Positions 29,801 to 58,383 of a stretch of DNA of 64,000 nucleotides are shown in pieces. The DNA is taken from the IMG/VR virus record IMGVR_UViG_3300020474_000001, positions 143,656-207,655 of that record; one strand, written 5' to 3'. Under the pieces are notes generated by a model, which saw only the letters and a list, made by a program, of their open reading frames with translations, was not told where the DNA came from and ran no database searches. A program made the translations under genes and the position numbers. The stretch's first letter is position 1. Each line of letters starts with the position of its first letter.

Positions 29801-32800
29801 TTGCCAAATCATTTCATAATCCCTATCAAGATAGAAATTCAGTTCAAATGCAGAATATCTTACAGATTGTCTTAAATATGAAAGAGATGGATCTGACATA
29901 TCAAATATTAATGTAGAATCTTTGTAAATACTTAATTTTGGATTTACAGATCCAATCTCGCCAGAAGAAGATGTTAAAATACTTACGATTTTGTGAGATA
30001 GTGAATTGTTGTAAGTATCTGATAATTTTATAGTATCACTATCAACAAATACTACATAATAAATCTGGTTATTCAACAATCCATCAGAAGGATTTGATGA
30101 AGTGTATATGATCTTATCCCCTGTGAATAATCCATGATTTGAAATTGTAATCGAACTCATCTGAGTGTCTACATCTCCTTGATCGAATGACTTTTTATCT
30201 AAGATCATTCTTCTAGTATCATCATTATATGAAATAATATGTGTAAATGATTCTTTTGGATTTACAGAAAGAACAATCCCATCTTCTGCTGATAACTCGT
30301 GATTTTCTACAGTATTAATATAGATTTCATTTTTTGAGATATTTCCGATCAAATTATCATATGTTGTCTCAAAACTGTGGTAAATCCCAGTCCCAACATC
30401 ATTGAAAAATAGCGTTCTAGACGCTTCAGAATCGCTTGTAATGCCCACAAAAGAACCTTCAGATCCTATCCCTACCTTAACGGTAGATATGCCGATTAGA
30501 TCCTCAGAAATTCTAGCAACATAGAGATTTTGGTTGTTGCTTAAAGTAAATCCAATACCGACATTTTCTTCTGATACGATAATACCTGTACCAGAATTTA
30601 TTTTATACTTAACTAGATCTCCAGTTCTTAATCCATGATCTTTAAGATATATTGATTTAGTTGGGATATACAAAGAACCATCATCAGTGCTAATCGTCGT
30701 GCCGATTCCAATACCAGAAATAGTTCCAATTCCAATCGATTGAACTGGATTGAAATATATTTCTTTATTCTGCTGGCTTATATAATTTTCCTTAGATTTG
30801 ATTTTTAATCTTCTGGGAATTTCAGATAATCTGGAAAATATTGTATGGGAATCTCCAGATGTCCCATCAAATTCTCTTAAGACCCTAATATAAGATTGAG
30901 TCTTATTGATATTCAATACCTTTACTTTTTCCGAGTCAATTTGGTAAATATCATTTTCTTTCACTTCAGATAATGCATTGTTTCCCAATACTTTAAAGAT
31001 TGTGACAATACCAGTCTGACCAGAATCTTGAATAGATTCAGATATTCTTAAATTTATTGGATTTACACTTGCAATATATGTTCCTTCAAGATTAAAATTT
31101 GAAGAAATTCCAGAAATATTAATTATATCATTATTTCCCAAATCATGTGGTGTATTGGAAGTTATGAGGTATGTATCTTTTTGATTTAAAGATGATACTT
31201 CAACATTATCGGATTGAACTGTTTCAAATCTTATGGATTCTACAGATTTTCCTTTAACATGAGAAACTCTTCCTGATGCATTTGATCCACCACTATCAAC
31301 ATCATTAAATAATACTCTATCATTAACCTTATAATAGTCTCCAGGATTTTTTACAATAATAGAATCGAGTTCTCCCGGTTTAATAGATTCTATTACCAGT
31401 CTTTGTGAATTATCACTTGGTACATCAAGATAATCGTAATTCTTTCCAGAATTACTTAAATTGTACGGTTTTGTATTTCTAGCCCAACTCTTATTAAAAT
31501 TGAAATGGTTCTGATTTGAATTTCTTTCGAAGTTGAATTTTATTGGACTACTTTGATAGAAGTTTCCAATCAAATATGGGAATTCTGGTTTTTTGTATTT
31601 AATAAATGGTCCAGAAGATTCTACCGTAGTTGGATTTAGTGTTGCAAAGTAGGCATAAGTCCCATTTGGGAAATCTGGAGTTATACAAAATCTTCCATTA
31701 TTTGGATCTAGAATATCTTCGCTACTTGAGTTTACATAATCATAGTCTTCTACAAAAAATCCTTCTGGAAATATAGATGTTGGTGGTCTCCCCTGTTTTA
31801 TATTCAGTTTATATCCAGATTTCATTTGAGTGATACTACCTCTACCATCTTTTTTGGAATATGCATATGGTCCATAAATTGGATTGCCATCATATGCCCA
31901 ACCAATGATTGGAGAGTGATTTATTGAAGATACTTCAATATTATTTGATTTCCTTAAATCTTTTTTCCCATATAATTTTTCTCCGTTAGAATCTATAGAA
32001 TGTATAGTCTCCCTCAGACCTCTTGGAGCATATATGTAAGAAGATTGCAGACCTTTACTGGAATCAACTCCATTAGAAAGAACAGTATCGTCAAATTCTA
32101 CATTTGATATATTTTTTTCAAAAAGGTTGACACTCCAGGATTTTACTATTGGATTTAAATTTGCATCCTGTCCCGAAGGTTCAATATTTACAAAAGTTTC
32201 TTGAGTAAATCCAAATCCACCACTTATTACATTAATATCTCGTAAAAATCCGTTCTCAATTATAGGAGTTAAAACTGCACCTGTACCATTACCTATAATT
32301 ATCAAATCTGGTGGAGAGGTATACCCACTACCCTGATTCAATATGACTACATCTACAATTTCTCCGTTGTTTACTACTGTTTTTGCTTGAGCATTGACAC
32401 CAAAGTTAAATTCAACAATTGGATCTCTATTATAATTGATTATCTCAGAAGATCCATATCCAACACCTCCAGAAGATACATGTACTCCTGAAATTTCTCC
32501 TCTGAAAATAGGTTGAACAACAACTTCAAATGTTTCTCCACCAATAGAAGAAATACCAACTTTACTTATGATGTCTACTCTAATTTTTTGGTAATTAAAT
32601 ATGCTAATGCCACTGCCTTTTGAACTCAGATTTACATACTTTCCTTCAATGTAGTTTTTCTGTTCATCATCACTTTCACTAACTTCAGATAACTTAAACT
32701 CGTCATCATTTAACTTTTTCACGTAATATTCTTTACTTAATTCCAATCCACCAATAGTACTTCCAGTTGATGAAACATATTCTACTATTTCCCCAGATTC

Positions 32801-35635
32801 ATATCCATGATTTTGGAGGGTAATGCATTTTTTCTGTAAATTTACATTATTTTCTCTTATTGCTCTTCTCTTATTTTGGTAATTTTGACCCGAATTAAGA
32901 ATATTGAAAGATTCGACTGTAAATTTCTTCTCTATAGATTCGATAATGTGATCACCAACACCCAATGCAGTTAAATTTACTGGATTTGAACCTGAAATAG
33001 AGTCATCTCTTGTATTGTATAGAGAAATTGTATATTCATCTTTGGATTCCACAAAATAATTTGAACCATTAGATAATCCACCGACAGACTGCTGGTCATT
33101 TGTTATATAAACAACTTGTTCTCCTGTTTTAAATTTGTGATATCCGGAGAATATAATTTTATTGTCTGTAGTTGAAATTCCCACAGAATTGAATTTTTCA
33201 AAATGTCTAGATCTCACCATATTTGGAGATACTAATGCCCCAGAACCATTTCCACCAGTAATTGTTACGATTGGTGATTCTTGGTAATCAAATCCAGGAT
33301 TTATAATTCTAAGCTCACTTAAAGATCCTGATACATCTAAAAGTGCTTCAGCACCAGTTCCAAATTTATCAGAAATTGTCAAATCTGGCGGATTTATAAC
33401 ATCAAAGTCAAATCCAGGAGAAAGTACGTCAATTTTCTCAATTTCTCCAAATTTTATACAATCAAAAGATTTGTAATTTAAAATTTCTACACCATTTATC
33501 ATTATTCCAGTAAAACCTGGACTTGTTTCCACTTTTTTTGAAATTTTTTCTGGATTTTTTAATTTTCTAAGTAAATTTTGGTTATCTAAAGACTTTTCTC
33601 TTAATTCATATGGTTCAAGTGTATTATTATTAACAATTTTATCAGAATCTAAAGAAATAAATATAGAATTTTCAATATTTGAGAGACTGAGTGCAAATTT
33701 TACTTCAGTTGAAGAAATTCTTTTGATAAAATATTGCCCAGGATCAAATAAAGATGATAATGTTCTCTCAACAACAGTAAATCCATCTAAAGATGCATCA
33801 GAATCTTCAATTCTTTGCACTTCTACCTCTGGTTTATAGAAAACTGAGTCTCCAGTGTAAAATCCATGATCATTTATGTCTGAAATTGCGAAAATTTCTT
33901 CTCCTTCTTGAAAATTTCCAGAAAAATACAATTTTCTCTCGGCATTTTCTCTTAAATTTGAAGGAATTGATGATGATGCTATCAAATATTCCTCTTCTTC
34001 ATTATGTTTGTATAAATTTTGAACATTTGTGATATAATTATCATCATATTTAAGAATATTTCTCTTAATTTTTACATAATTTGCATCTAGTGAGGAATTG
34101 CAGCGTACTGAAATCACTTTTTCTGATATAATATCAGTTATTTTGCCCGAAACAATTTCTTGAGATGTGGAAATTACCTCAAATTGGTCATTCACTATGA
34201 AATCGTGAGAATTTTTTAGAATTATTTGGTAACTATTATCAAACTCAGCAATTAAATCAATATTTTTAATATCAAACGATGGAGAAGTGTTGTAAATCCA
34301 GTTATCATTCTTAAAATCTTCTTCATAATATCCCAAGTGCTTGAATTTGACTGAAAGATTTTTATGATAACCATAGGTATCATCAGGAAATTCTACTTTT
34401 TCTGGTATTGAGTGAATTCTTACCTTAATAGTATCGTCACCAGACTTTGCATATGCAAATGTATTGATACTAACTGGAGTCGCATCTAAAATTTTTGATG
34501 AAACATTTCTACAACCAAAGAATTGATTGAGAGATTTCATCTTATAAGACACCACACCGTTACTTAAATTGTCATAAGTTACATATATCTCACCCTTTTC
34601 TGGGAAACCTATAGTAGAATCTACAGTAATTGTTGTTGCGCCACTCTCTATATTGCCAATAACTCTTGTTTGTGGATGTACTTTAAAGTCTCCATAGATA
34701 GAACTCTTTAAACCACTATCTCTGTTAGAACCAAGACCAGAGTCTAACTTTGCTTTATAATATATTTCTCCAGTATTTGAGTCATCTATTTTTTCAACAC
34801 CTGTAATTGGTGCAAATGCTTCTCCTATTATATCTTTGTATGGATCTTGACATAGTGTAGATAGGCTTAGCTTATCGGGATTTCCAGAAATAACTTCCAA
34901 AATTATTTCATCGAATGTCTCATAGTTGGAATTTGATGGGGTAAGGAGAAAATCTTTAGGAGTTAGGATTTCAACTTTCTCTCCATATAATAGTTTGAAT
35001 AGTAATTCAAATCCAACTTCAGTTCCTTTTGATGAATAAAAATCTCTACTATTTTGAATAAAGATATTTTCATCAACTGAGTAGTCAAATTTTTTATTTT
35101 CTAGTCCAGGTAAAAGCTGATGTTTTAATTTAAGTAATAGTTCTTTTAAAAATAATGAACTGAGATTATGAATAGTTGCACCGGATGCATGCTTACTGAT
35201 ATTTGTAGATTCAAATGTAAGATCTCCCATCTTATCTTGATCTCTGTATCCAGAAATACCACTAAATCCTCTCACACATCCAGTAAACGAGAAACGAGTT
35301 TTTCCCGTATATGTGATAATTTCATCATCTATCTTGAGAAGTCCATAGGCATCTGGAAATCCATTTGTTCCAGTATAGGAAGTGGATGGATTGATTCTTA
35401 TCGTTCTGTCACCAAACCCAATATCTCCCTGTAAAATTGCAGATTCTGTGCAATTGGTCAGTTCGTCTAACTTTACATACTTGTCTATGTTCTGAATTAA
35501 ATCATATGGACCACCAGGATACTCTTGACCAGTGTAATACTGCTGCAAGAACTCTTCAAAAAGAGGATATTCTTCACGAACATATGTTGGAATCTGGCTC
35601 TTTAAAACCTGACTGATTTTAATTCTTTGAGACAT
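23885..35635 (-). CDS. gp7: Baseplate wedge initiator, 3916 aa
   Basis: Very large ORF between gp6 and gp8; FY.SKGT...F..LF..LYGE motif, IGWAYDGNPIYGPY segment, QDSDYYQKFSY motif and many GSGY repeats. Confidence 0.88.
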   Translation of the reverse strand: MSQRIKISQVLKSQIPTYVREEYPLFEEFLQQYYTGQEYPGGPYDLIQNIDKYVKLDELTNCTESAILQGDIGFGDRTIRINPSTSYTGTNGFPDAYGLLKIDDEIITYTGKTRFSFTGCVRGFSGISGYRDQDKMGDLTFESTNISKHASGATIHNLSSLFLKELLLKLKHQLLPGLENKKFDYSVDENIFIQNSRDFYSSKGTEVGFELLFKLLYGEKVEILTPKDFLLTPSNSNYETFDEIILEVISGNPDKLSLSTLCQDPYKDIIGEAFAPITGVEKIDDSNTGEIYYKAKLDSGLGSNRDSGLKSSIYGDFKVHPQTRVIGNIESGATTITVDSTIGFPEKGEIYVTYDNLSNGVVSYKMKSLNQFFGCRNVSSKILDATPVSINTFAYAKSGDDTIKVRIHSIPEKVEFPDDTYGYHKNLSVKFKHLGYYEEDFKNDNWIYNTSPSFDIKNIDLIAEFDNSYQIILKNSHDFIVNDQFEVISTSQEIVSGKITDIISEKVISVRCNSSLDANYVKIKRNILKYDDNYITNVQNLYKHNEEEEYLIASSSIPSNLRENAERKLYFSGNFQEGEEIFAISDINDHGFYTGDSVFYKPEVEVQRIEDSDASLDGFTVVERTLSSLFDPGQYFIKRISSTEVKFALSLSNIENSIFISLDSDKIVNNNTLEPYELREKSLDNQNLLRKLKNPEKISKKVETSPGFTGIMINGVEILNYKSFDCIKFGEIEKIDVLSPGFDFDVINPPDLTISDKFGTGAEALLDVSGSLSELRIINPGFDYQESPIVTITGGNGSGALVSPNMVRSRHFEKFNSVGISTTDNKIIFSGYHKFKTGEQVVYITNDQQSVGGLSNGSNYFVESKDEYTISLYNTRDDSISGSNPVNLTALGVGDHIIESIEKKFTVESFNILNSGQNYQNKRRAIRENNVNLQKKCITLQNHGYESGEIVEYVSSTGSTIGGLELSKEYYVKKLNDDEFKLSEVSESDDEQKNYIEGKYVNLSSKGSGISIFNYQKIRVDIISKVGISSIGGETFEVVVQPIFRGEISGVHVSSGGVGYGSSEIINYNRDPIVEFNFGVNAQAKTVVNNGEIVDVVILNQGSGYTSPPDLIIIGNGTGAVLTPIIENGFLRDINVISGGFGFTQETFVNIEPSGQDANLNPIVKSWSVNLFEKNISNVEFDDTVLSNGVDSSKGLQSSYIYAPRGLRETIHSIDSNGEKLYGKKDLRKSNNIEVSSINHSPIIGWAYDGNPIYGPYAYSKKDGRGSITQMKSGYKLNIKQGRPPTSIFPEGFFVEDYDYVNSSSEDILDPNNGRFCITPDFPNGTYAYFATLNPTTVESSGPFIKYKKPEFPYLIGNFYQSSPIKFNFERNSNQNHFNFNKSWARNTKPYNLSNSGKNYDYLDVPSDNSQRLVIESIKPGELDSIIVKNPGDYYKVNDRVLFNDVDSGGSNASGRVSHVKGKSVESIRFETVQSDNVEVSSLNQKDTYLITSNTPHDLGNNDIINISGISSNFNLEGTYIASVNPINLRISESIQDSGQTGIVTIFKVLGNNALSEVKENDIYQIDSEKVKVLNINKTQSYIRVLREFDGTSGDSHTIFSRLSEIPRRLKIKSKENYISQQNKEIYFNPVQSIGIGTISGIGIGTTISTDDGSLYIPTKSIYLKDHGLRTGDLVKYKINSGTGIIVSEENVGIGFTLSNNQNLYVARISEDLIGISTVKVGIGSEGSFVGITSDSEASRTLFFNDVGTGIYHSFETTYDNLIGNISKNEIYINTVENHELSAEDGIVLSVNPKESFTHIISYNDDTRRMILDKKSFDQGDVDTQMSSITISNHGLFTGDKIIYTSSNPSDGLLNNQIYYVVFVDSDTIKLSDTYNNSLSHKIVSILTSSSGEIGSVNPKLSIYKDSTLIFDMSDPSLSYLRQSVRYSAFELNFYLDRDYEMIWQESILNANRVGRPGIDSDAKVTLSISDETPKFLYYRLDPIIENIPPESKLELFVDDELLDSSSIIVKDSNYNGVYNIEVLSEKSFKFNTKKIVESESYDPDISDINYATTSLTASGPISKIFVSNKGKNYRKLPKISSIDSQLGENAVLEPLSNSIGKVNSVRISSVKKSYPSDETLRPTACLTQILKVDPLYTIDSISISSNGKPYLVAPKLIVKDSTRNEVIDDLDLNYDLENSSIEVLKNTTRLSNSEPIIIPTQNSNGVGISTISYNEATNDVTVSLNVQYSDTESFPVKVGDRFLIENVINKTSGRGFNSKDYNYTLFEAISTVENIGSSLYGSVTYNISDLIEIGDTIGQFDDTRSFGKLIPESYFPVFSTTLRKSDFLTKETYKLHENIRGKDHSGTIEYWDSETGVMHISSSDDYEVGSSVKGISSKAEGIVTESIRISPYLPLNSSLSVKTSSKTESGFLNNNLQKIQDSDYYQKFSYSVRSRVDYDTWNDDVSPLAHTTGFKKFSDYQLESFVENPNSMIVGLSTGTFEQINNLIGKCNLNSVFDFDLASENNIDGASTKIVFNSKILGDYFESVGNRVLEIDNISEEFNSNPRADEFSEIAPFVFSERRFGKYLTYVKDKRFTQQRQLMVVDLLHDGSDAYMNQYARVETAYDLGSFDYSVFGDRGLLLFYPNKTEINNYDITAVSFNLDETLQSTGTGEIGGALLTTSTESIEEEETTTIFEIDDTYTSFKILVEIDPDPSENQEFEVTEMNIVKIGSDIHILESTKISTDLQVTSSVGFGTYRAYTEDSKIKIDFTPNQNITINSGVANSLVIALKDFSSTDNGFSDLKFGRVESKTTSIAASASPQPEVIAEYQSSDGYDAAYFIVQISDTTNNTVEFSEIILVDTYQEEVPTYDTYQTQYGIISNGETVGTISSRIIFDTSYKTQLIFTPIQNIDVHANVFMTAINISDESKTNLDAIDGLVSSFSGSYEGTHADIKKSFDMTNGGSPIFENIFSGEDSSVVDVSNHSINLQNHFFVTGESLTYNSNASGESNSVFESIEIEPTDFVGIGVTNRLPSSVFAIKVTNNVIKLASTPENALKGTPEFIRFANVGIGSDHKLTSNNQNSKVLVTIDNVIQSPIFSTTLNKTSVRDILITDDKVLVNDVSGLFGGELIQINDEVMLVDSIGVGTTNAIRVRRSQLGTGIYSHTSGADIRKVGGNYNIVDNKINFAEAPYGRVPIGSPTNDPEDRDWTGISTSSNFNGRVFLRSGIPNTSEETYNKNYVFDDISHQFNTINNQFTLKHDSSNVSDIPNPILLINDIFQYPDSVNYSLDQNLGISTITFDDSGDNTISIPRGGSIISVGSSQGFGYQPLVTAGGSAGIASDGTIESISVGNTGSGYRSGIQTVNVSVYNDFNDIEVVGSANVLDGHVTDYVVTNPGSGYTSTTPPKIIVDAPLSYNNIPLVYSSTSSGSGIGTGAVADIIVGNDSKVIDFTLTNSGYGYEIGEVLTLPSGSSVGIPTTTGFQEFIITVDRTVTDKFSAWSLGELVLLDNIEKFIDGTRKIFPLTKSNISQSIISGEGSSVDVQNVLIVFVNNILQIPGEGYIFSGGSLITFTEPLELGDTVEILFYRGSGNIDVIKRNIIETVKRGDEIQIINDPSVGQNSHLKEDTRIAESVESTNIINTNAYFGPGNVSNEDLLRPVIWTKQTEDKIINDQEVGKDRELYEPSINPVSYLINPVGVGQTIIYADTLRPAFDNVSENDKDTSFQNEITLLSQTEVKTENCKVEQYSGDFGVVVGFAVTTDPHNRMIFDLQIPDDSIMRDESLVGTAVTVSQLSSGDYFTISSSLITPESSLVPLISYDTNFNIVGMTTSFIDSTFFVEDAEIISRNIDGVQTTLKRVSCRINRFDSTTAPTVYSGDLVSSGYLGSFSWGKIILKERTKQNTYDPSSLNGYVGISSSTVIRRSIPLQYINYLQ

Positions 35636-39855: not shown

Positions 39856-39892
39856 AATTCAGGGGGAAGATGTAAAGAATGGGGAGCGTTGC

Positions 39893-40084
39893 CTAGTCAA
39901 GGAGAACAGCAGCGTGATCGTTAGCGAAGCGGCGAGCGTTACAGGCAGCGATCTGCCATGCGGGACGCCCTGCTGAGGGTTCAGGGAACGCTGCGGAAAT
40001 GGCAGCATCGACGCCCTGGTGGATGGAGCGTTCAACCCATACGTGGGAACGATCAGAGAGGGAGCAAGCGGGAGAGAAGGGCAT
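39893..40084 (-). CDS. Early hypothetical protein
   Basis: 63-aa ORF with pyrimidine-rich leader, in series with its neighbours. Confidence 0.5.
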   Translation of the reverse strand: MPFSPACSLSDRSHVWVERSIHQGVDAAISAAFPEPSAGRPAWQIAACNARRFANDHAAVLLD

Positions 40085-40142
40085 TGGAAGAACGGGGGGA
40101 GAGATACATGGGGGCGACGATGCCCCCGCTGTGTTGTGGTGC

Positions 40143-40361
40143 TTAGGGGAACATCAAGTCGGTAAAGCGCTCGGAGTGCCATGCCCGCAACTCGCCTAGG
40201 TCGATTCGCTCGCCCATCAGGCGTCCGTAGTCGATGGCGAACTGCTGTAGAAGGCAAAGTTCAGGATTAACAGGGTCCCAGACATAGCGAACTGCCTCTG
40301 GAAAGGAGATGGTGCCATTGGCATCAGCGGTGGGCATTGGTTTCGTTTGAACTAAACCCAT
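40143..40361 (-). CDS. Early hypothetical protein
   Basis: 72-aa ORF downstream of the palindromic promoter at 40397. Confidence 0.6.
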   Translation of the reverse strand: MGLVQTKPMPTADANGTISFPEAVRYVWDPVNPELCLLQQFAIDYGRLMGERIDLGELRAWHSERFTDLMFP

Positions 40362-45401: not shown

Positions 45402-45842
45402 CTATCGTCTTCGTAGATAATTACCACGCCAATCTGCCCTTGCTAACATATCAATACGCTGTGCAATAATTGTCACATTAAATAAAATCTTTTTTGTCCG
45501 CCTTGGTTGCTGGTAGGGTGATACTGCATACACTGCCCCAGTAGTTTTATCAATAAAACAATGAATATAACTTTCTCCGGTACTTTTGTTCTTACACATA
45601 ATCAAATGATGCAATGTTTCACTCTGGCTATCAACAACAAACTCCAAATCTGCAAGATTTTCATTAGTAAACCTCTTAGATGTTTTCTGAGTATGTGCAA
45701 GCGCAGCATTAAGAACATCTTTATTCAGTGCATCAATCAATTCAAAACAACATGCTTTGATCTTCAAATAGATGGTATTCTTGGCATCCATTTGAATAGA
45801 CATTTGATCGAATGTAGCAGTAGTTGACATGACTAATAACAC
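45402..45842 (-). CDS. Early protein, paralog family A (IHCFIDKTTGAVY...ADWRGNYL)
   Basis: Shares the H/F-x-F-[IV]-D-K-x-T-G-x-x-Y motif with 44972-45310. Confidence 0.7.
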   Translation of the reverse strand: MLLVMSTTATFDQMSIQMDAKNTIYLKIKACCFELIDALNKDVLNAALAHTQKTSKRFTNENLADLEFVVDSQSETLHHLIMCKNKSTGESYIHCFIDKTTGAVYAVSPYQQPRRTKKILFNVTIIAQRIDMLARADWRGNYLRRR

Positions 45843-49869: not shown

Positions 49870-50947
49870 TCACTGTGACAGTGGATCAAGTGGTTTCTTG
49901 GTCAATCTGTTCAGGAGAAACTTTTCAAACCATTCACCGTAATTCTGTTCCAAATTGTTTCTCACTTTAGTATAATCAGTCGTATAATATACTTGTTCTG
50001 TCTCTGAGTAATCCACAATATAGATATTATCCTTCATTCTAAAAATTGTCGCATATTTCTCATATACACCACGAATCGGTGTATAAACAAAATACTCAAT
50101 TTCTTCGGCTAATGATGCCGAAGGTTGCACATATTGGAATGGGATCATGAGAACATCCGCTGCATGTTAGTCTGGTCACGGATCATAATCCGCAAAAGAT
50201 CTTGATCTCTTGGAGAAACAGTGTGAAAGTTCTGTTTCATCTGACTGACACTATTCTCTAGTGCGTGTTTAATATGAACACGCTGAATTGGAGACAAACT
50301 GAGAATGAATGTTTTCTTGGTCATTAGATCACATGCGATGGGTTGTTGCGTGAGATGTGCTATGAATGATGATCAAAATACTGATCAAAGAGATGATTGT
50401 ATGGGTCATTTGTTCCCCAAAATTGTGTCAATTCCGTCACCAATACGCTCTCCAAAAGACTCTGATTGGTCCTCTGGTGCAACAACTTCAGCAGCGGAGA
50501 ATAGTAGTTTGGATAAGTAGGATCTTGAGGGTTCATGATTCCAGATGACAAATCCAAAGAACAGAGCAACAGCGAAGCGCATGTAGAATTTGATCCAAAT
50601 TGAGCGGAGATGTGAGTATGAAAGTGACGATTTTCTGCTCATAGGAGAACCTTCAAACTTTGAATCGTCTTTAATAGGATACCTTGATTCTTTGAGTTGG
50701 TCTCCCTCAATTTCTTATATCTTTCTGAAGGAGTCATTTCAATATCTTCATGTTCAAATGTATTCGTAAGGGCAACATCAAGTTGCTTGACAACATTCTC
50801 TACAATCTTAATATACTTTTGTTGCTGCCCCATTTGACAGTTCAAATCCTGAAGACCATCAATGGTATGATCCCATTGTGAATCTTCTGGTGCAAATTGT
50901 TTGACTAATTCGATTGTCTTTTCAAGATCATCGATAGACAGTTTCAT
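49870..50947 (-). CDS. Small hypothetical ORFs (49870, 50406 with a membrane segment, 50639)
   Basis: Operon-like packing. Confidence 0.55.
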
Positions 50948-51641
50948 GACTTTTGATGGGTTGTTGATTAAATTGATTAGTTTTAGAGTGATTCAACCAT
51001 CGTTCGATCTCTTCGCGGTCTATGTATCTGCTAGAAGTCGTTTTCAAAAATTTGTTTAGTTTTTCAGTATCAACTTTGTCCTGTCTATACTTCATCCAAT
51101 TACTCAGTGATGCTTTCTCGATATTCTTATTTGTCACTTCTTTTGAAAACACGGACATTTTCAAATGCGGTGTCTTGCCTCTAAGGATGCTTCCTATACT
51201 GGTGTTTTGCTGCGTATAAGTCATTAAATAATCACCAGTAAATTCAATGCGGTTGAACATCTGCTCTCTTTGTTCATCGCAAGAGATATTGCCCCTTAGT
51301 TGGTGACTATGGGTGTAAACATCTCCAGTCTGATGATTTATCAAGCAATGCACTTCTTTATTGCCCTTTTCTCTAATTAGTGGATGATGCGCCATAATCT
51401 TGATATATTTCAGACTAGGAACTTCAGCATAGAATTTAAGGTCGTTCTTACCAGTTTTGTTGATGTAATCTTCGTTCAAGATTTCAGCATATTTGTTGGC
51501 ATAATTCCAACAAATTGTAGTATTGATGAACTTAGTTTGTTCATCTTGCATTTTACAATTTAATGACATAGGATTCACCAGATTGATACAATAGTCTATT
51601 CTGATTGAGTGTAGATACAAAGTCAAGGGTGAGTGTGACAA
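50928..51641 (-). CDS. Early protein, paralog family A with C-terminal extension
   Basis: LKYIKI...VHCLINHQTGDVY...IEFTGDYL matches family A motifs. Confidence 0.65.
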   Translation of the reverse strand: MSHSPLTLYLHSIRIDYCINLVNPMSLNCKMQDEQTKFINTTICWNYANKYAEILNEDYINKTGKNDLKFYAEVPSLKYIKIMAHHPLIREKGNKEVHCLINHQTGDVYTHSHQLRGNISCDEQREQMFNRIEFTGDYLMTYTQQNTSIGSILRGKTPHLKMSVFSKEVTNKNIEKASLSNWMKYRQDKVDTEKLNKFLKTTSSRYIDREEIERWLNHSKTNQFNQQPIKSHETVYR

Positions 51642-52384
51642 TCATCCAACCGTCACCCATGAGAATAACTCAACTTCTCGTTTCTTATTAAATGGTGCAA
51701 AGAGACGTTCACTAATTCTATCTTTAGTAATGAAAATAGAAGTATAGTTTTTGATTGGTTTCCCATCTGCATAAAGAACATAAGAATCTTTGATGTGATT
51801 ATTGCGCTTTTTTATTAACCTAATTTTATGGGGAGTAGTGAGATAGCAGGAACGAAGAAATACATCTAATCTTTTTAAGTTCTGATTGCGAATCAGTAAC
51901 CATCCATGATTGTTGCTTGAAAAGTGATCTGGAACACTGGTAGACCTAATTTCAATCATATTATTTCCCACACGGGCAAGAACCTGCCCGTGCGACGACC
52001 AAATCGAACAAGAATTGGAGTGATCATATTCTATTTTATATCTACCCCTATAATGTTGAGTAGATGTTTGCTCTTCGATAGCGTTGAATATGTCATCAAT
52101 ATCATGATCACCGAGATCTTCGCAATCGATTTTGTTCCAATCAATCAATCTATGCCTCATAGCAATTTACCTTGGTTGATAGGTTGGCAGGTATACGCAT
52201 CGCCCAGGAATGTGTCTGCGATGATCAGAGTGTGTGTTCCTGATTTCAATTTGCATTTATCGACCGCATTGGGATTGAAAAAGACAAACTGACCAGTAAT
52301 ACAAACTAATGCCATCGTAATTGCCCCAAATGAAAATGGAACAAGTGAATCAATCAAATCGTCGTCGGGTAGAAAATTTTTCAT
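51642..52384 (-). CDS. Hypothetical ORFs 51642-52160 and 52157-52384 (membrane protein)
   Basis: ATGA-overlapping ORFs. Confidence 0.6.
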
Positions 52385-52419
52385 TGTGTTGGGGAAGAAG
52401 AGAGAATTTGCTATTATGA

Positions 52420-53841
52420 TCAGGCAAGAGTTTCATACACTAACTCGCCAATTTGTTGCCCCATTTCTCTACCACGAAGGTCTCCATCTTGAATATGGAT
52501 TCCACCGGGAAGTCGAGACCATCCAGCATCATCAGCAGCATCTTGAAGAGTGTCCCAGCGAAGGGTGATTGGTTCACCATTATAATCCTCAAAGACCAGA
52601 TCTTGAGTTGTATATTCTCCTACCAAATGACGCTTGCCATCACCATAGTGATCGTAACCTTTTGACACACCATCATAATACTCATCGCTGCCATAAAATT
52701 TCGACAATACTTCAGCAGCAGCACCACTAAATGTGCTGTGTCCTGATACAAACTCGGGGAAGGATGGTGTGACAAATGTAGGAGATTGATACGGTTGCCA
52801 ATCAGAACCTGTGATAGTATCAATGCCCTTGTTTGGACCTTTCCATCCTTGAATTTCATCATCAGCAAACAGTTTACGAATTGCTGTTTGTGGACGAACA
52901 CCATAACCTTTTTCGCCCCAGTGATACTTACTATCCCATGCTGCAATGCCAGCATCCATCAATGCAGCATTAAGTAGGAAAGTTGACTTCACATCATCTT
53001 TCAAATCGTTGCCGTATTTGAGACAAAGGTCCATATTGATCTCATTCCAATGCCCAGGAGGTGTGCTTGACATAGGGCCATCCGCCCAGTATTCTGCGGT
53101 TGTTTTATCAAATGGAGTCATATTTGCCTGAACATCAACAACTTCCTGGAATTGCTTTACGAAAGCATTATGTTCCGTAGAAACATTTCCCAAAGCATCA
53201 ACATACATGTCGTCACTTCCATACCTAGGTGGTGCTGGAGCACGGAATTGATCACCACTTTCCATTACTGCGGGACGAACATACATGTGCCCAGGTGATA
53301 GAGCACCAGGAACGTAGTAGGATTCTTCATTTTCAGTTGCGATGGGCGTGCCAATGTCGTTCACCACAACTCCCGTGGGCACTTTTGGCGGTTGCCAGGC
53401 GTTAATATCACCCGAATCTGAAGGATAAAACTCTATACTGTTATCAATTCCATCATTTTTACGGGATCTATGTGCCATTTTCGCTACTTTGCGACCCAAC
53501 TTGTATTCTTTTCTGGTAAGATCGGGCGCAATTTCTTTTAATTGATCGTCCAGAAACTCCTTCTGATCAGGATACAAGCGCTTGAGCATGAAAATACCAG
53601 CAGCAGCAACGATGTCGCTCTGGTCATGTTTCTGAAACTTTCGTGCTCTGTAGGATCTTGCGAATCCTTCTTCCTTCTTATCGAACGCCGCCAAAGCGTC
53701 GTTCATTGCCATGCTGGTTAGGAACAGCGATCGAGAAATAGTCGTTGGTGCCGGGGGGTTCTTTCTGATTTGCTGGAGTTGCAAGTCAATGACTTGCATT
53801 GCGACAGATGGTTGTTGACCAGTGATTGGATCGATAGACAT
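52420..53841 (-). CDS. Vanadium-dependent haloperoxidase / PAP2-superfamily enzyme (start probably MSIDP at 53841)
   Basis: Active-site motifs WDSKY...VRP, PSFPEFVSGHSTFS and SRLPGGIH, plus TPPGHW. The GTG at 53982 leaves no room for the divergent promoter. Confidence 0.85.
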   Translation of the reverse strand: MSIDPITGQQPSVAMQVIDLQLQQIRKNPPAPTTISRSLFLTSMAMNDALAAFDKKEEGFARSYRARKFQKHDQSDIVAAAGIFMLKRLYPDQKEFLDDQLKEIAPDLTRKEYKLGRKVAKMAHRSRKNDGIDNSIEFYPSDSGDINAWQPPKVPTGVVVNDIGTPIATENEESYYVPGALSPGHMYVRPAVMESGDQFRAPAPPRYGSDDMYVDALGNVSTEHNAFVKQFQEVVDVQANMTPFDKTTAEYWADGPMSSTPPGHWNEINMDLCLKYGNDLKDDVKSTFLLNAALMDAGIAAWDSKYHWGEKGYGVRPQTAIRKLFADDEIQGWKGPNKGIDTITGSDWQPYQSPTFVTPSFPEFVSGHSTFSGAAAEVLSKFYGSDEYYDGVSKGYDHYGDGKRHLVGEYTTQDLVFEDYNGEPITLRWDTLQDAADDAGWSRLPGGIHIQDGDLRGREMGQQIGELVYETLA

Positions 53842-53997
53842 AACAAATGGTATAGAAAGGTCTGGGGAACTTGCCCCACCACAAGTATGCCTGTGTATAG
53901 ACCGATATGGATAATTGTGGTCCAGTTCATGAGCTGTCCACTGCACCTTGACACTCGATGCTTTCCGTCCCAAGATCGCCACATCACATTCTTTACA

Positions 53998-54156
53998 ATG
54001 AACGAACGAAAGCGCAGGATTTCAATAACACTAAGTCCAAAGGAGCATGATGCTGCTAAGCAATACTGTCGCGATAATTGCCTTACTTTTTCATCGATGA
54101 TTTCTCGTCTATTGTCTATGGTAGAAAAGGGACAAATAGAGATTTTTAAGCAATAA
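53998..54156 (+). CDS. Ribbon-helix-helix (CopG/Arc-like) DNA-binding protein, 52 aa
   Basis: MNERKRRISITLSPKEHDAAKQYCRDNCLTFSSMISRLL: alternating beta strand then two helices. TTGACA-17-CAAGAT promoter at about 53948-53976. Confidence 0.7.
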   Translation: MNERKRRISITLSPKEHDAAKQYCRDNCLTFSSMISRLLSMVEKGQIEIFKQ

Positions 54157-54423: not shown

Positions 54424-55427
54424 TCAAGCAGAATATCGATCTGGTGTAGACAGATCCTCGACATATTTACTAACGACCTTTTCGCTCCCTTCCAACTTAA
54501 ATGCTCTGGCAAAATCAATCTGATGTGGATTAAAATCGTCCAATGCTTCAATCTCTAATGTGATTCGATACTTACTTTTTTGTGAACGACGATAAGTAGA
54601 TGATGGCATAAGTGGCAAATGGTGGTTGTTACTTTTCTATTATAGAATGTGATTTAGAATTAGTCAATTCTGATGATATTTATTATCGAATTATGTCATC
54701 GAAGATAAACATAAAAACGGGAGACCAAGATGATCTCCCATATCTAAGATATTTACATTTGATCCATCATTTCTAAGTGAACATCTTTAGCACCTTGAAT
54801 GATATTTACGCACTTACTTAAGCAGTGCAATACAATTTTAGTTTGTGATTTGTCCCAAATGACAAATTCTGAAAATAAGATTTTTAGAATTTCTGTTGCT
54901 TCAATCGTGTAATCTTCGTCCGATTGCATACACCAGTTAATCACATCCTTTTGAGGAAGAGAAAATTTGAAACTATAAAAGTTGCGACTGTAAACTTTTG
55001 TTTCAGAAATGATTGGGAATGATTCTGGAGTCGCAGTGGTCATGGTCCGACCTTTATGATTGCTTTTGAAGGATAGGCAAAAATACTCCACAGCGCAACC
55101 CATTGTCTTCATGTCAAGGTTGATTTTTGTATCATCTGTAGCAAAGATAAAGAGAATCTAATCTAAATCTGTATCCCAGTATTCCATCCCAACAATATCC
55201 CGATAGATTTCTTCCACATTGTTTCCCTTCCAATTAACAATTTCATCACGTTGTTGTATGAGATACTCTAATGTCTGATCAATTTCTATAATTTGTGACT
55301 GCAATGTCTCTTTTCTAAGTTTTAATTCAAGAATTGATTTATCGTAGTCTAGTTGTGACAAAGGCGAACCTCCTTTGTTATTATCTCCTGACATACTATT
55401 TATGTCATTGTGCTCTTTGTTACTCAT
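54424..55427 (-). CDS. Small hypothetical ORFs (54424 KYRITLEIEALDDFNPHQID, 54753, 55158)
   Basis: Clean minus-strand ORFs. Confidence 0.6.
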
Positions 55428-56920: not shown

Positions 56921-57196
56921 TCAATCTCCAACATACAGAAGCATGTTATCTGCTCCGAGTTTCTTACATCCAGATCCAGTGAATCCGATGCTTCTGACTG
57001 ATCGAAACTCCTCACCATTTGGCGTAGCAAAACTCACCCCATCACGAATGTATTGGTCTTCAATGCTTTTGTCGCAAATAATGACTGGTTTGTCCAAACA
57101 ATCATCTGGAATTTCATCCAGAATTGCTCTCAGTTCCCGATAAGTTCCCAGATCAAAATCTGTGTGGGGAACAATGAATCGCTCATTCATTGTCAT
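56921..57196 (-). CDS. Hypothetical protein
   Basis: ATGA-coupled to the helicase stop. Confidence 0.65.
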   Translation of the reverse strand: MTMNERFIVPHTDFDLGTYRELRAILDEIPDDCLDKPVIICDKSIEDQYIRDGVSFATPNGEEFRSVRSIGFTGSGCKKLGADNMLLYVGD

Positions 57197-58383
57197 TTTT
57201 GTCCGATTGTTCGAGTGAGAGATTGACCTTGGTTGATAGAATCAATCACTGAGGATAAATTCCTAGTGGTTTTGATTCCGACCGTATCGTAGGCACATAC
57301 GGAGATCGTGCCAGCAGATTTAAGAATCACATTATGATTATCAATTCGCAATACTCTACCGATAGATTGTGTCGCTGCTGTAACATTTGGCGAGCGTAGG
57401 AAGATTACTGATTCGAGCGAAGGTATATTGATCCCCTCAGTTAATATATTGTAATGAAGTATTATGAAGCGGCATGTCCCGTTGTCCCCCCATTCTTTTA
57501 ACACTTCAAAGAACTGATCTCGACTAACATGCACATCATTGACGATTGCACCATGTTTTGATGTAATCGAGCACCAATTAAATCCTCTGGATTTTAATTC
57601 CTGGCGGAGATTGGTATTATAAAGCATCTCCATCATCTGTTTTGTGCTCCTGGCACACACTAGAACCTTGGATTTGCCATCATTATCAATAGTTTTGACC
57701 AGATTTTCTGCTTCTATTTCACGATTAAGGTCACTCTTTTTGACCTTAGGGAATGAGCTGACAGACAATTCTGGTGGTAAAATATATCCAGAGTCAATAA
57801 GTTTTTTTGTAACAACTCTATACAAGACATTTCCATACACTTCAATGTCATTCATGCCAGGTAAGTGAGTAACATTAGAGTGGGTAGGAGTAGCAGTGAA
57901 GAAATAACAGCGGTCGCTATTATCAGCAGCAAAGTGCTCCGTGCTAGGGAAAAAGTTTCTCTTAATACTATGGTGTGCTTCATCAAAATAGATTGTATCT
58001 GCATGAATACCTGCCTCCCGAAGTTTCTTAAGAGAGTGATAGGTTGTAAAAAAGATTTGATGATGATATGCTTGATCTGACCACCTGCGAATGTAGTTTG
58101 CATTTGTAGAACTCATGTGGTTGATTTGACCACTATGCACATGCAGCACAGCAGCATTTATTTCATGTTCAATGAACTCTTCGCATAATTGTTGTGCAAG
58201 AAGAATTCTTGGTGCAACAACAATATGCTTACCTGGAGTATCACCAAGAGAAGCAAATCTGTCGATGCAATCTTGCACCATACAAATGGTCTTACCTGAA
58301 CCTGTAGGCATGATAATCTGCCCATGATGATGAGATTTCATTGCGTCACATGCTTGACGCTGATATGGACGTAGATCAATCAT
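57193..58383 (-). CDS. SF2 DEAH-box helicase (ResIII/UvsW-like)
   Basis: MPTGSGKT, FDEAHH, FTAT, LTEGINIP and QSIGRVLR motifs. Confidence 0.92.
   Translation of the reverse strand: MIDLRPYQRQACDAMKSHHHGQIIMPTGSGKTICMVQDCIDRFASLGDTPGKHIVVAPRILLAQQLCEEFIEHEINAAVLHVHSGQINHMSSTNANYIRRWSDQAYHHQIFFTTYHSLKKLREAGIHADTIYFDEAHHSIKRNFFPSTEHFAADNSDRCYFFTATPTHSNVTHLPGMNDIEVYGNVLYRVVTKKLIDSGYILPPELSVSSFPKVKKSDLNREIEAENLVKTIDNDGKSKVLVCARSTKQMMEMLYNTNLRQELKSRGFNWCSITSKHGAIVNDVHVSRDQFFEVLKEWGDNGTCRFIILHYNILTEGINIPSLESVIFLRSPNVTAATQSIGRVLRIDNHNVILKSAGTISVCAYDTVGIKTTRNLSSVIDSINQGQSLTRTIGQK

What the first reader, a model, noticed from the sequence alone, without database searches (positions are those of the whole stretch)
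52420..53841. Phage-encoded vanadium haloperoxidase-like enzyme
Seen: a 473-aa protein with all three vanadate/phosphate-binding motifs (K...RP, PEFVSGH, SRLPGGIH) and TPPGHW, inside the early region. Established: vanadium haloperoxidases use H2O2 to make HOBr, HOI or HOCl, share their active site with PAP2 acid phosphatases, and occur in some marine Synechococcus. Inference: an unusual auxiliary gene that could drain photosynthetic H2O2, halogenate organics (volatile halocarbons, grazer or competitor deterrence), or act as a phosphatase. I do not know it as a standard cyanophage AMG.
Basis: partly seen in the sequence, partly recalled or inferred. Interest (0 to 1): 0.8.

Follow-up and report, generated by a model that had tools for sequence, protein, structure and literature searches.

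The report
Cyanophage-encoded vanadium haloperoxidase-like enzyme
An uncultured T4-like virus of marine Synechococcus carries an intact, selectively maintained gene of the vanadium haloperoxidase enzyme family, acquired from the picocyanobacterial gene pool; no such gene is in any sequenced phage isolate, and if active it would let infected cells turn hydrogen peroxide and sea-water halides into reactive halogen.

Summary
Window 52420-53841 (-) is an intact 473-aa ORF with every quoted motif. It has the two-helical-bundle fold of vanadium haloperoxidases (VHPOs): the 13 best PDB fold matches are all VHPOs, and PAP2 phosphatases match only half the protein. All seven vanadate-binding residues and the two halide-pocket residues are invariant in 30 viral variants. 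The window is a Kyanoviridae cyanomyovirus (portal 78% identical to S-SM2). The gene is absent from 50,697 GenBank phage records and rare in IMG/VR (6 loci), yet it recurs in at least 20 marine metagenome runs. A second cyanomyovirus lineage carries a 52%-identical copy inside the petE-PTOX-gnd-zwf metabolic-gene island. Both lineages are under purifying selection (dN/dS 0.13 and 0.05-0.10). The viral copies form a short-form clade sister to marine Synechococcus homologues. They lack the hosts' terminal extensions and any signal peptide. The enzyme has the His-type active site of non-selective, hypohalous-acid-releasing VHPOs, not the Lys-Ser dyad of selective ones. The window lineage uniquely has a 4-residue insertion in the first vanadate-binding motif. 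Catalysis is untested for this whole subfamily, and phosphatase activity remains a live rival. It is a new member of a known enzyme kind in a new, viral setting.

The parts
52420..53841 (-). VHPO-like CDS, 473 aa (ATG 53841, stop TGA 52420-52422)
   Evidence: Pfam VCPO_2nd 6e-9. AF2 model pLDDT 83, pTM 0.88. The top 13 PDB fold hits are all VHPOs. dN/dS is 0.13 against L002/L003.
53461..53811 (-). N-terminal helical bundle (residues ~11-127), equivalent to DUF6851 of the homologues; the most diverged part
   Evidence: Helices 13-27, 32-51, 71-89, 91-104 and 111-126 in the model. It aligns with the PF21167 region of homologues. 20 of the 21 changes at family-conserved positions fall in residues 17-275.
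52435..52971 (-). C-terminal catalytic helical bundle (Pfam VCPO_2nd match, residues 291-469)
   Evidence: Only one change at a family-conserved position (D405H) falls in this part.
53047..53064 (-). TPPGHW motif (residues 260-265), invariant in the family
52891..52938 (-). Vanadate-binding motif I: W302-x2-K305-x10-R316-P317 (W302 matches the halide-pocket Trp350 of Curvularia VCPO)
   Evidence: Residue equivalences follow the published CiVCPO numbering (own knowledge) and the ZgVIPO alignment.
52906..52917 (-). Lineage-specific 4-residue insertion GEKG (residues 309-312) inside motif I
   Evidence: Present in all 19 window-lineage sequences and in none of the other 359 homologues scored. Variable only at E/K310.
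52735..52767 (-). Motif II: PSFPEFVSGHS (F361 matches Phe397; S366-G367-H368 match Ser402-Gly403-His404 of CiVCPO)
   Evidence: SGH is found in all 247 homologues in which this motif was matched.
52486..52518 (-). Motif III: SRLPGGIHIQD (R443 matches Arg490; H449 matches the vanadate-ligating His496); Pro445 replaces the usual Tyr
53998..54156 (+). 52-aa CopG/ribbon-helix-helix-like ORF transcribed divergently from the VHPO gene; part of the conserved three-gene block
   Evidence: Conserved in L009 (3 conservative aa changes from 9 nt changes) and in L003. The protein atlas's named hits are all RHH/CopG families, score 0.92-0.93. Pfam gives only a weak DUF6364 match, E 0.11.
52157..52384 (-). 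75-aa single-pass membrane protein immediately downstream; co-conserved with the VHPO gene in the window lineage
   Evidence: hydrophobic stretch FSFGAITMALVCITGQFVFF. No family hit.

Best explanation
The gene encodes a functional, cytoplasmic, minimal-core member of the vanadium-dependent haloperoxidase (VHPO) superfamily. Cyanomyoviruses obtained it from the marine picocyanobacterial gene pool and keep it as an auxiliary metabolic gene. Proposed mechanism (inferred): vanadate, which is taken up like phosphate, binds covalently to His449 and is held by Lys305, Arg316, Ser366, Gly367 and Arg443. H2O2 forms a peroxo-vanadate, with His368 acting as acid/base. A halide (bromide or iodide, perhaps chloride) approaches at the Trp302/Phe361 pocket and is oxidised to hypohalous acid. 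The acid is released freely (non-selective type), because the enzyme has the SGH histidine and lacks the Lys-Ser dyad that retains HOX in selective bacterial VHPOs. In the infected cell this would consume the H2O2 produced by continuing photosynthesis. It would generate HOX, which either halogenates available organics or reacts with a second H2O2. What is shown: homology, fold, intact site, purifying selection, viral residence in two lineages, and origin near Synechococcus. What is inferred: vanadate dependence, halide oxidation, non-selectivity, cytoplasmic site of action and the physiological role.
For: Fold: AF2 model pLDDT 83.2, pTM 0.88. The 13 best PDB fold hits are all VHPOs (XhnO11 7.7e-18, NapH1, NapH3, ZgVIPO TMt 0.75, CiVCPO ~1e-10). 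PAP2 acid phosphatases reach only E 0.03 and TMq 0.25-0.30, covering one bundle. Profile: the family profile hits esVHPO 1e-56, NapH3 1e-48, XhnO11 9e-43, NapH1 2e-38, ZgVIPO 3e-24 and CiVCPO 2e-9, with no phosphatase at E<=0.01. Pfam VCPO_2nd is above its cut-off and PAP2 is below. Active site: K305, R316, P317, S366, G367, H368, R443, H449, W302 and F361 are invariant in 16 sequences of the window lineage and 15 of the other short-form sequences. Type: SGH is present, and Gly255-Pro256 sits where selective VHPOs have the dyad lysine (alignment read). Selection: dN/dS is 0.13 at dS 0.22 and 0.05-0.10 in the second lineage. The gene is more conserved than its neighbours (6% against 13-50% nt divergence). 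Viral residence: hallmark T4-like genes in the window; the same locus in independent assemblies L003 and L009; GC3 of 0.367 equals the regional mean of 0.373. Origin: the short-form clade (100/99) is sister to picocyanobacterial homologues (100/100). Redox context: the second lineage's copy lies in the petE-PTOX-gnd-zwf AMG island. No signal peptide or membrane segment.
Against: No member of this DUF6851+VCPO_2nd subfamily has been assayed; the literature search found nothing, and sources name homologues inconsistently as haloperoxidase, phosphoesterase or PAP2 phosphatase. VHPOs and PAP2 phosphatases share the same catalytic residues, so the motifs alone do not discriminate, and apo-VCPO is itself a phosphatase (PDB 3bb0 among the hits). 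The window lineage has a unique 4-residue insertion between the vanadate-binding Lys and Arg, plus a Tyr-to-Pro change in motif III. It differs at 21 of 114 family-conserved positions and sits on a 1.14 substitutions/site stem. Model confidence is only 76-80 around the insertion and below 50 at residues 357-360 next to motif II. Most cellular homologues appear to be exported (Sec signals, RTX tails), whereas this protein would make toxic HOX inside the cytoplasm. Expression evidence is a single 164-nt metatranscriptome contig.
Confidence: 0.55

Rival explanations
1. It works as a phosphatase or phosphoesterase. The conserved His/Lys/Arg site hydrolyses phosphomonoesters as in PAP2 acid phosphatases and apo-VCPO. 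This would add to the phosphate-acquisition repertoire of cyanophages in P-poor water.
For: The catalytic residues are identical in both enzyme classes. There is a weak PAP2 match (PF01569, E 0.12), and PAP2 is precomputed on several homologues. Sources name homologues 'phosphoesterase' and 'phosphatase PAP2 family protein'. PDB 3bb0 shows apo-VCPO with a trapped phosphate intermediate. The insertion in motif I and the long branch could mark a functional shift.
Against: The PAP2 score of 12.6 bits is far below the 27.2 cut-off. The family profile finds no phosphatase in the PDB. Phosphatases match only one of the two bundles. The halide-pocket residues W302 and F361 are invariant. The protein is cytoplasmic, so it cannot scavenge external organic phosphate. 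Neither the host locus (PsbP-RecR-VHPO-RTX) nor the viral loci sit next to phosphate-regulon genes.
Confidence: 0.2
2. It is a VHPO-fold enzyme with a non-halogenating activity, for example a vanadate-independent rearrangement like NapH3, or peroxidative oxidation of another substrate such as sulfides or thiols.
For: NapH3, a non-halogenating homologue, is among the best hits (1e-48 with the profile; fold 1.3e-16). The window lineage has diverged strongly in the N-terminal bundle and the connecting region.
Against: The complete vanadate site and the halide pocket are conserved under purifying selection in both viral lineages and in cellular relatives. No biosynthetic gene cluster is adjacent.
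Confidence: 0.12
3. It is a substrate-selective halogenase like NapH1 or esVHPO. It retains HOX on a lysine and halogenates one defined metabolite, such as a signalling molecule.
For: esVHPO and NapH1 are the closest solved structures by sequence and fold.
Against: The defining Lys-Ser dyad is absent. The Ser position is His368 (SGH), and the Lys position aligns with Gly255-Pro256. The anionic gate Glu aligns with Ala253 (alignment read).
Confidence: 0.06
4. It is a decaying passenger gene, or an assembly chimera that placed a cellular gene on a viral contig.
For: The gene is rare among viral catalogues (6 IMG/VR loci) and absent from isolates. The stem branch is long.
Against: The ORF is intact in at least 30 variants. 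dN/dS is 0.05-0.13. The same phage flanks appear in independent assemblies from different samples. Codon-third-position GC equals that of phage genes. Contigs of up to 69 kb carry it.
Confidence: 0.02

Closest known systems
Non-selective bacterial/fungal VHPOs: Zobellia galactanivorans iodoperoxidase (PDB 4cit/4usz) and Curvularia inaequalis chloroperoxidase (1vnc/1idq)
   Same: Two-helical-bundle fold (TMt 0.72-0.75 to ZgVIPO). Similar size (473 against 458 aa for ZgVIPO). Same Lys/Arg/Ser-Gly-His/Arg/His vanadate site, with a Trp at K-3 and a Phe at H-7. SGH histidine and no dyad lysine.
   Different: Only 15-22% identity. K-x10-RP instead of K-x6-RP. Pro instead of Tyr in SRxYGGIH. Phage-encoded and without a signal peptide. 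Never assayed.
Selective bacterial VHPOs: esVHPO of Enhygromyxa salina (9ptr/9pts), NapH1 (3w35/3w36), XhnO11 (9l8x)
   Same: These are the best sequence and fold matches (1e-21 with the single sequence, 1e-56 with the profile; Foldseek ~1e-17). They share the bundle architecture and vanadate ligands.
   Different: This protein lacks the Lys-Ser dyad and the anionic gate that define HOX retention and site selectivity. It is not in a biosynthetic cluster.
Uncharacterised DUF6851+VCPO_2nd proteins of marine Synechococcus (CC9616, MIT S1220, MED-G70) and Roseobacter-group bacteria
   Same: These are its true family: 40-50% identity over the full core, with all conserved motifs shared. The picocyanobacterial clade is the sister group.
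   Different: The cellular proteins are 600-820 aa. They carry long Pro/Asp/Glu-rich N-termini (Synechococcus) or C-terminal RTX repeats (Roseobacters), or Sec signals in other phyla. The viral forms are the bare 464-473 aa core.
Macroalgal-type bromoperoxidases, including the characterised cyanobacterial enzymes of Synechococcus CC9311 and Acaryochloris marina
   Same: Same superfamily chemistry and same host genus. CC9311 shows that marine Synechococcus can use a VHPO (Johnson et al. 2011, cited in PMC10427571).
   Different: A different clade. There is no significant sequence hit, and the fold matches are insignificant (E 0.03-0.7, TM 0.13-0.18).
VirX1, the flavin-dependent halogenase of cyanophage Syn10
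   Same: It is the only previously reported cyanophage halogenating enzyme, and so a precedent for halogen chemistry as a viral auxiliary function.
   Different: Unrelated fold and cofactor (FAD/NADH and O2 rather than vanadate and H2O2). It binds its substrate and is selective, rather than releasing HOX.
PAP2 acid phosphatases (e.g. PDB 7f17)
   Same: Shared catalytic motif set and homologous C-terminal bundle.
   Different: They are about 210-230 aa single-bundle proteins. The Pfam PAP2 score is below threshold and the fold match covers only TMq 0.25-0.30.

Membership tests
Vanadium-dependent haloperoxidase superfamily (VCPO/VIPO/bacterial VHPO branch) | Two consecutive helical-bundle domains (N-terminal bundle plus catalytic C-terminal bundle) | tested here: met
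   AF2 model pTM 0.88. The 13 best PDB matches are all VHPOs, with TM 0.55-0.75 over the whole chain.
Vanadium-dependent haloperoxidase superfamily (VCPO/VIPO/bacterial VHPO branch) | Vanadate ligands: Lys, Arg, Ser-Gly-His, Arg and the covalent His | tested here: met
   K305, R316, S366-G367-H368, R443 and H449 are invariant in 31 short-form sequences and in the 16-sequence family alignment.
Vanadium-dependent haloperoxidase superfamily (VCPO/VIPO/bacterial VHPO branch) | Canonical motif spacing K-x6-R-P | tested here: not met
   The spacing is K-x10-RP. 357 of 378 homologues have x6, and the x10 form is confined to the 19 window-lineage sequences.
Vanadium-dependent haloperoxidase superfamily (VCPO/VIPO/bacterial VHPO branch) | Curated HMM match above threshold | tested here: met
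   PF22778 VCPO_2nd: 36.5 bits against a cut-off of 27.
Vanadium-dependent haloperoxidase superfamily (VCPO/VIPO/bacterial VHPO branch) | Vanadate-dependent, H2O2-dependent halide oxidation | not testable with these tools
   Needs an enzyme assay. No member of the subfamily has been assayed, according to the searches.
Selective (HOX-retaining) bacterial VHPOs, NapH1/esVHPO type | Lys-Ser dyad (esVHPO K329/S429) and anionic gate Glu | tested here: not met
   In the alignment, with numbering, the dyad Ser position is His368, the dyad Lys aligns with Gly255 (followed by Pro256), and the gate Glu aligns with Ala253.
Macroalgal-type vanadium bromoperoxidases (Corallina, Ascophyllum, Acaryochloris, Synechococcus CC9311) | Significant sequence or fold similarity to solved members | tested here: not met
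   Absent from the phmmer hits at E<=1. Foldseek gives E 0.03-0.7 and TM 0.13-0.18 for 8vh0, 1qhb and 5aa6.
PAP2 acid phosphatase family (PF01569) | HMM match above threshold and single-bundle ~200-250 aa architecture | tested here: not met
   12.6 bits against a 27.2 cut-off. Phosphatase structures cover only part of the model, with TMq 0.25-0.30 and E 0.03-0.08.
DUF6851+VCPO_2nd subfamily (marine Synechococcus / Roseobacter proteins) | Full-length homology including the N-terminal DUF6851 bundle | tested here: met
   95-100% query coverage at 40-52% identity, and nested in the family tree. PF21167 itself does not reach threshold on the window protein, consistent with its diverged N-terminal half.
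Established cyanophage auxiliary metabolic genes | Presence in sequenced cyanophage isolates or prior description | tested here: not met
   No tblastn hit in 50,697 phage records. PHROGs has no family for it. BFVD has one giant-virus hit and no phage. No literature.

The most novel reading that the evidence does not exclude
The viral enzyme is an active, halide-dependent H2O2 sink working inside picocyanobacteria, which largely lack catalase. Infection would then make the virocell independent of 'helper' bacteria for peroxide removal. At the same time it would convert photosynthetic H2O2 into HOBr/HOI and volatile or dissolved organohalogens. Cyanophage infection would thereby become a previously unrecognised biological source of marine reactive halogen and halocarbons, possibly also deterring grazers or competing phages before lysis. 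The lineage-specific insertion at the vanadate site would tune halide access for the cytoplasmic milieu.
Probability: 0.2. Interest if true: 0.85.

Novelty: new member of a known kind. Interest (0 to 1): 0.6.

Why it matters
Vanadium haloperoxidases are the main biological route from H2O2 and sea-water halides to hypohalous acids and to halocarbons such as bromoform, which affect atmospheric ozone chemistry. Marine picocyanobacteria are among the most abundant phototrophs, are heavily infected, and are notably sensitive to H2O2. A haloperoxidase gene carried by their viruses is maintained by selection in two cyanomyovirus lineages, and in one of them it sits beside the plastocyanin, PTOX and pentose-phosphate genes. 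This would add a new class of auxiliary metabolic gene linking infection to peroxide management and halogen cycling. It also offers enzymologists a naturally minimised, soluble, tail-less VHPO core, with a natural insertion variant at the vanadate site, for biocatalysis studies. The only earlier viral halogenase, VirX1, is of an unrelated, flavin-dependent type.

Tried and rejected
1. NCBIfam gave no hit and PHROGs only a chance-level hit (E 0.32), so neither helps with naming.
2. PADLOC found nothing for the VHPO gene or its four neighbours, so a known defence-system role is not supported.
3. Structured RNA or riboswitch upstream: Rfam found nothing in the whole window. The 168-nt leader folds no better than shuffles (z -0.33). 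Its apparently high conservation against L003 is not seen against L009. This lead was dropped.
4. The promoter/terminator scan found 7 promoter-like sites against 7.3 expected, so it cannot support or refute the 'early gene' claim. There is no TATAAATA-type late-promoter sequence in the 156 nt upstream (by inspection).
5. The upstream GTG start (520-aa form used by some gene callers) was rejected as the likely start, because the extension is poorly conserved and has no counterpart in any homologue.
6. Expression: four metatranscriptome runs gave one 164-nt contig only, which is too little to claim transcription.
7. Host-locus context was checked for a phosphate-regulon or peroxide link. It showed only PsbP-RecR-VHPO-RTX-like, which is uninformative.
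8. Recent horizontal capture was rejected for the window lineage (GC3 equals the phage background). It remains possible for the second lineage (GC 0.50 against flanks of 0.39).
Full report
**Observation.** The window has an open reading frame at 52420..53982 on the minus strand. Every quoted motif is present at verified coordinates:
- TPPGHW: residues 260-265
- WDSK...RP: residues 302-317
- PSFPEFVSGHS: residues 359-369
- SRLPGGIHIQD: residues 442-452

I prefer the ATG to the upstream GTG that some gene callers used (520 aa). Homology to every relative starts near residue 11. The second viral lineage starts at the equivalent point. The 47 extra codons vary at about one position in five across variants, against about one in twenty in the core.

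**What kind of genome.** Nearly all genes are on the minus strand. PHROG scans identify head scaffold, portal, tail sheath, large terminase, sheath stabiliser, head closure and baseplate wedge proteins, and a UvsW-type helicase. This is a T4-like myovirus.
- The portal protein is 78% identical to Synechococcus phage S-SM2 (Kyanoviridae) and 75-77% identical to SynMITS9220M01, Bellamy and S-SCSM1.
- The window is part of IMG/VR contig 3300020474_000001, 207,655 bp.
- The target lies in a block of small ORFs between the baseplate module (up to about 38 kb) and the helicase at 57193-58383.
- Whether the block is 'early' was not shown: the promoter scan is at chance level.

**What the protein is.**
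- Pfam gives VCPO_2nd (PF22778) at 36.5 bits against a cut-off of 27, and PAP2 only at 12.6 bits against 27.2.
- Against PDB sequences the best hits are vanadium haloperoxidases: esVHPO 1.3e-21, XhnO11, the Zobellia iodoperoxidase, NapH3, NapH1 and the Curvularia chloroperoxidase.
- With a profile of the family these rise to 1e-56, 1e-48, 9e-43, 2e-38, 3e-24 and 2e-9, and no phosphatase appears.
- An AlphaFold2 model from a 16-sequence alignment has pLDDT 83 and pTM 0.88. Its 13 best Foldseek matches in the PDB are all VHPOs, with TM 0.55-0.75 across both helical bundles.
- PAP2 phosphatases match only one bundle (E 0.03, TMq 0.25-0.30). Macroalgal-type bromoperoxidases are not significant.

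**Active site.** In the family alignment the residues equivalent to the vanadate ligands of Curvularia VCPO are all invariant. The VCPO ligands are Lys353, Arg360, Ser402-Gly403-His404, Arg490 and His496 (numbering from my own knowledge of the literature). Here they are K305, R316(-P317), S366-G367-H368, R443 and H449.
- The Trp three residues before the Lys (W302) and the Phe seven before the His (F361) are also invariant. These are the VCPO halide-pocket positions.
- All of these are unchanged in 16 sequences of the window lineage and in 15 other short-form sequences.
- The preprint on esVHPO defines selective, HOX-retaining VHPOs by a Lys-Ser dyad and an anionic gate. It states that non-selective enzymes have proline in place of the dyad lysine.
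- Reading the alignment with that numbering, the dyad Ser position is His368, the dyad Lys aligns with Gly255 followed by Pro256, and the gate Glu aligns with Ala253.
- The phage protein therefore has the signature of non-selective, HOX-releasing enzymes such as ZgVIPO and CiVCPO. This is an inference from alignment, not an assay.

**Lineage-specific oddities.**
- The spacing between the Lys and Arg-Pro is 10 residues instead of 6. Of 378 homologues scored, 357 have x6. The x10 form, an insertion G(E/K)KG, is confined to the 19 sequences of the window lineage, as is Pro for Tyr in SRLYGGIH, with one exception.
- Of 114 positions conserved at 90% or more in 218 cellular homologues, the window protein differs at 21, against 13 and 5 for the other two short-form branches. 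Twenty of these changes lie in residues 17-275, and only D405H lies later in the C-terminal bundle.
- The lineage sits on a stem of 1.14 substitutions per site.
- I could not measure active-site distances because the model's coordinates were not exposed. Model confidence is 76-80 at the insertion and below 50 at residues 357-360.

**Is it a real, selected viral gene?**
- The same gene with the same phage flanks occurs in independent assemblies: L002 and L003 in IMG/VR, and the Tara scaffold L009. Its 90% cluster has 37 distinct sequences on contigs of up to 69 kb.
- dN/dS between the window and L002/L003 is 0.13 at dS 0.22.
- The gene is more conserved than its neighbours: 6.4% nt divergence, against 12.7% for the 75-aa ORF, 30% for the 172-aa ORF and unalignable sequence upstream.
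- GC3 is 0.367, equal to the regional mean of 0.373. The gene is therefore compositionally at home, not a recent capture or a chimera.
- The DNA is held by at least 20 marine, seawater or estuary metagenome runs from about 13 studies.
- Evidence of transcription is limited to one 164-nt, 100%-identical contig in one metatranscriptome.

**A second viral lineage and other viruses.**
- A 464-466-aa protein, 52% identical (P0002; 203 cluster members), lies on contigs whose flanks match S-SM2, Bellamy and S-SCSM1 on both sides, while the gene itself is absent from those isolates.
- On the 13.6-kb contig L092 it follows phage lysozyme, plastocyanin, PTOX, gnd and zwf. This is the classic cyanomyovirus metabolic-gene island.
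- It has canonical K-x6-RP spacing and dN/dS of 0.05-0.10. Its GC is 0.50 against 0.39 in its flanks, so it is less ameliorated than the window copy.
- Two further IMG/VR loci carry distant (32-34%) relatives. L007 is a T4-like contig with UvsW, gp47/gp46-like and Tet/JBP genes. Its copy has a Sec signal peptide and groups with a Myxococcota sequence (100/96), so it is an independent acquisition.
- The only hit in BFVD is a Klosneuvirus protein.
- There was no hit in 50,697 GenBank phage records.

**Origin.** A careful maximum-likelihood tree of 47 sequences (a 98-row quick tree agrees) gives these results:
- A short-form clade (100/99) contains the five viral rows, the metagenomic P0003, and a 3' fragment from Synechococcus single-cell genome AG-670-A05 (L017).
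- This clade is sister to long-form picocyanobacterial proteins (Synechococcus MIT S1220, CC9616, MED-G70 and others, plus one Jannaschia sequence). Their union has 100/100 support, and Roseobacter-group proteins lie outside it.
- The L017 fragment is 95% identical in DNA to P0003. It sits in mosaic-GC sequence beside what looks like the remnant of an integrase. That branch is therefore probably a cellular island gene, and the direction of exchange within the short-form clade is open.
- In Synechococcus chromosomes the long form occupies a conserved position: PsbP - RecR - VHPO-like - RTX-like protein.

**Architecture.** Cellular homologues are 600-820 aa. They carry Pro/Asp/Glu-rich N-termini (Synechococcus), C-terminal RTX repeats (Roseobacters) or Sec signals (Chloroflexota and others). 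The cyanophage forms are the bare two-bundle core. The window protein has no signal peptide or membrane segment (maximum Kyte-Doolittle 19-residue mean 1.06). It should therefore act in the cytoplasm, or after lysis.

**Mechanism and rivals.**
- Most likely (0.55): a vanadate-dependent, non-selective haloperoxidase that uses H2O2 to oxidise bromide or iodide (possibly chloride) to hypohalous acid in the infected cell. This would serve peroxide management and/or halogenation. The placement of the second lineage's copy beside PTOX and plastocyanin fits a redox role, though this is circumstantial.
- Phosphatase (0.20): it remains credible because the catalytic residues are shared and because the window lineage has changed the first motif. 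Against it are the fold and profile results, the conserved halide-pocket residues and the cytoplasmic location.
- Non-halogenating VHPO-fold activity (0.12).
- Selective halogenase (0.06).
- Pseudogene or artefact (0.02).

Halide specificity cannot be predicted: ZgVIPO and CiVCPO share the same Trp/Phe pair yet differ in specificity (own knowledge).

**Comparison with the known.**
- The protein is a member of the VHPO superfamily by fold, HMM and catalytic residues. It departs from the canonical motif spacing.
- It is not a member of the selective NapH1/esVHPO class, the macroalgal-type bromoperoxidases (which include the characterised Synechococcus CC9311 enzyme; and own knowledge) or the PAP2 phosphatase family.
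- Its own subfamily (DUF6851 + VCPO_2nd) has no assayed member that I could find.
- The only cyanophage halogenase in the searched literature is VirX1, a flavin enzyme.
- I found no report of a phage VHPO. That library does not cover most subscription journals.

**Verdict.** This is a new member of a known enzyme kind in a new biological setting. It recurs in ocean metagenomes and is selectively maintained, but its activity is unproven. Interest 0.6.

Noticed in passing
window 53998-54156 (+): A 52-aa ORF (MNERKRRISITLSPKEH...) is one of the few plus-strand genes and is transcribed divergently from the VHPO gene. It looks like a CopG/ribbon-helix-helix DNA-binding protein and is conserved with the VHPO gene across phage variants. 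It might regulate the cassette.
   Followed up: partly
window 52157-54156: Three genes stay 3-13% divergent between the window and L003 while both flanks are 30-50% divergent: the RHH-like ORF, the VHPO gene and a 75-aa single-pass membrane protein. The block behaves as a conserved cassette in a variable neighbourhood.
   Followed up: partly
window 54424-54667 (-): A 61-aa ORF (also called on L009) is preceded by the best sigma-70-like site of the region (TTGACT-17-TATAAT, 54667-54639). Transcription from there would run antisense through the RHH-like ORF into the VHPO gene.
   Followed up: no
window 39859-40361: Small minus-strand ORFs have GC 0.54-0.59 in a genome of GC 0.31-0.40. They have no Pfam family and may be recent acquisitions from a high-GC host.
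   Followed up: partly
window 45402-45830 and 50928-51569: Two paralogous DUF7717 proteins. The second has an extra C-terminal part with a weak U-box-like match.
   Followed up: no
window 14378-21559 and 23885-35635: Two giant minus-strand ORFs (2393 and 3916 aa) lie inside the baseplate/tail-fibre module.
   Followed up: no
L092 1-12014 (also L093, L094, L006, L004): The second cyanophage lineage carries its VHPO-like gene at the end of the petE - PTOX - gnd - zwf auxiliary-gene island, just before a PF00565 endonuclease. This is a different genome position from that in the window.
   Followed up: yes
L007 9935-11236: A T4-like, apparently non-cyanobacterial phage contig has an independently acquired VHPO-like gene with a Sec signal peptide. 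It lies between gp47/gp46-like recombination genes and a Tet/JBP dioxygenase.
   Followed up: partly
L017 1971-3521: Synechococcus single-cell genome AG-670-A05 holds only the 3' 270 codons of a P0003-type short-form gene. It sits next to an integrase-like remnant in mosaic-GC DNA, which suggests phage-host gene traffic at a genomic island.
   Followed up: partly
L013 (Jannaschia pagri): A 1482-aa Roseobacter-group protein has a VHPO core that groups with the picocyanobacterial clade rather than with other Roseobacters, hinting at transfer between these co-occurring groups.
   Followed up: no
BFVD A0A1V0SKZ4 (Klosneuvirus KNV1): It is the only viral predicted structure resembling the model (E 3e-14, TM 0.55-0.64), so a giant virus also encodes a VHPO-fold protein.
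   Followed up: no
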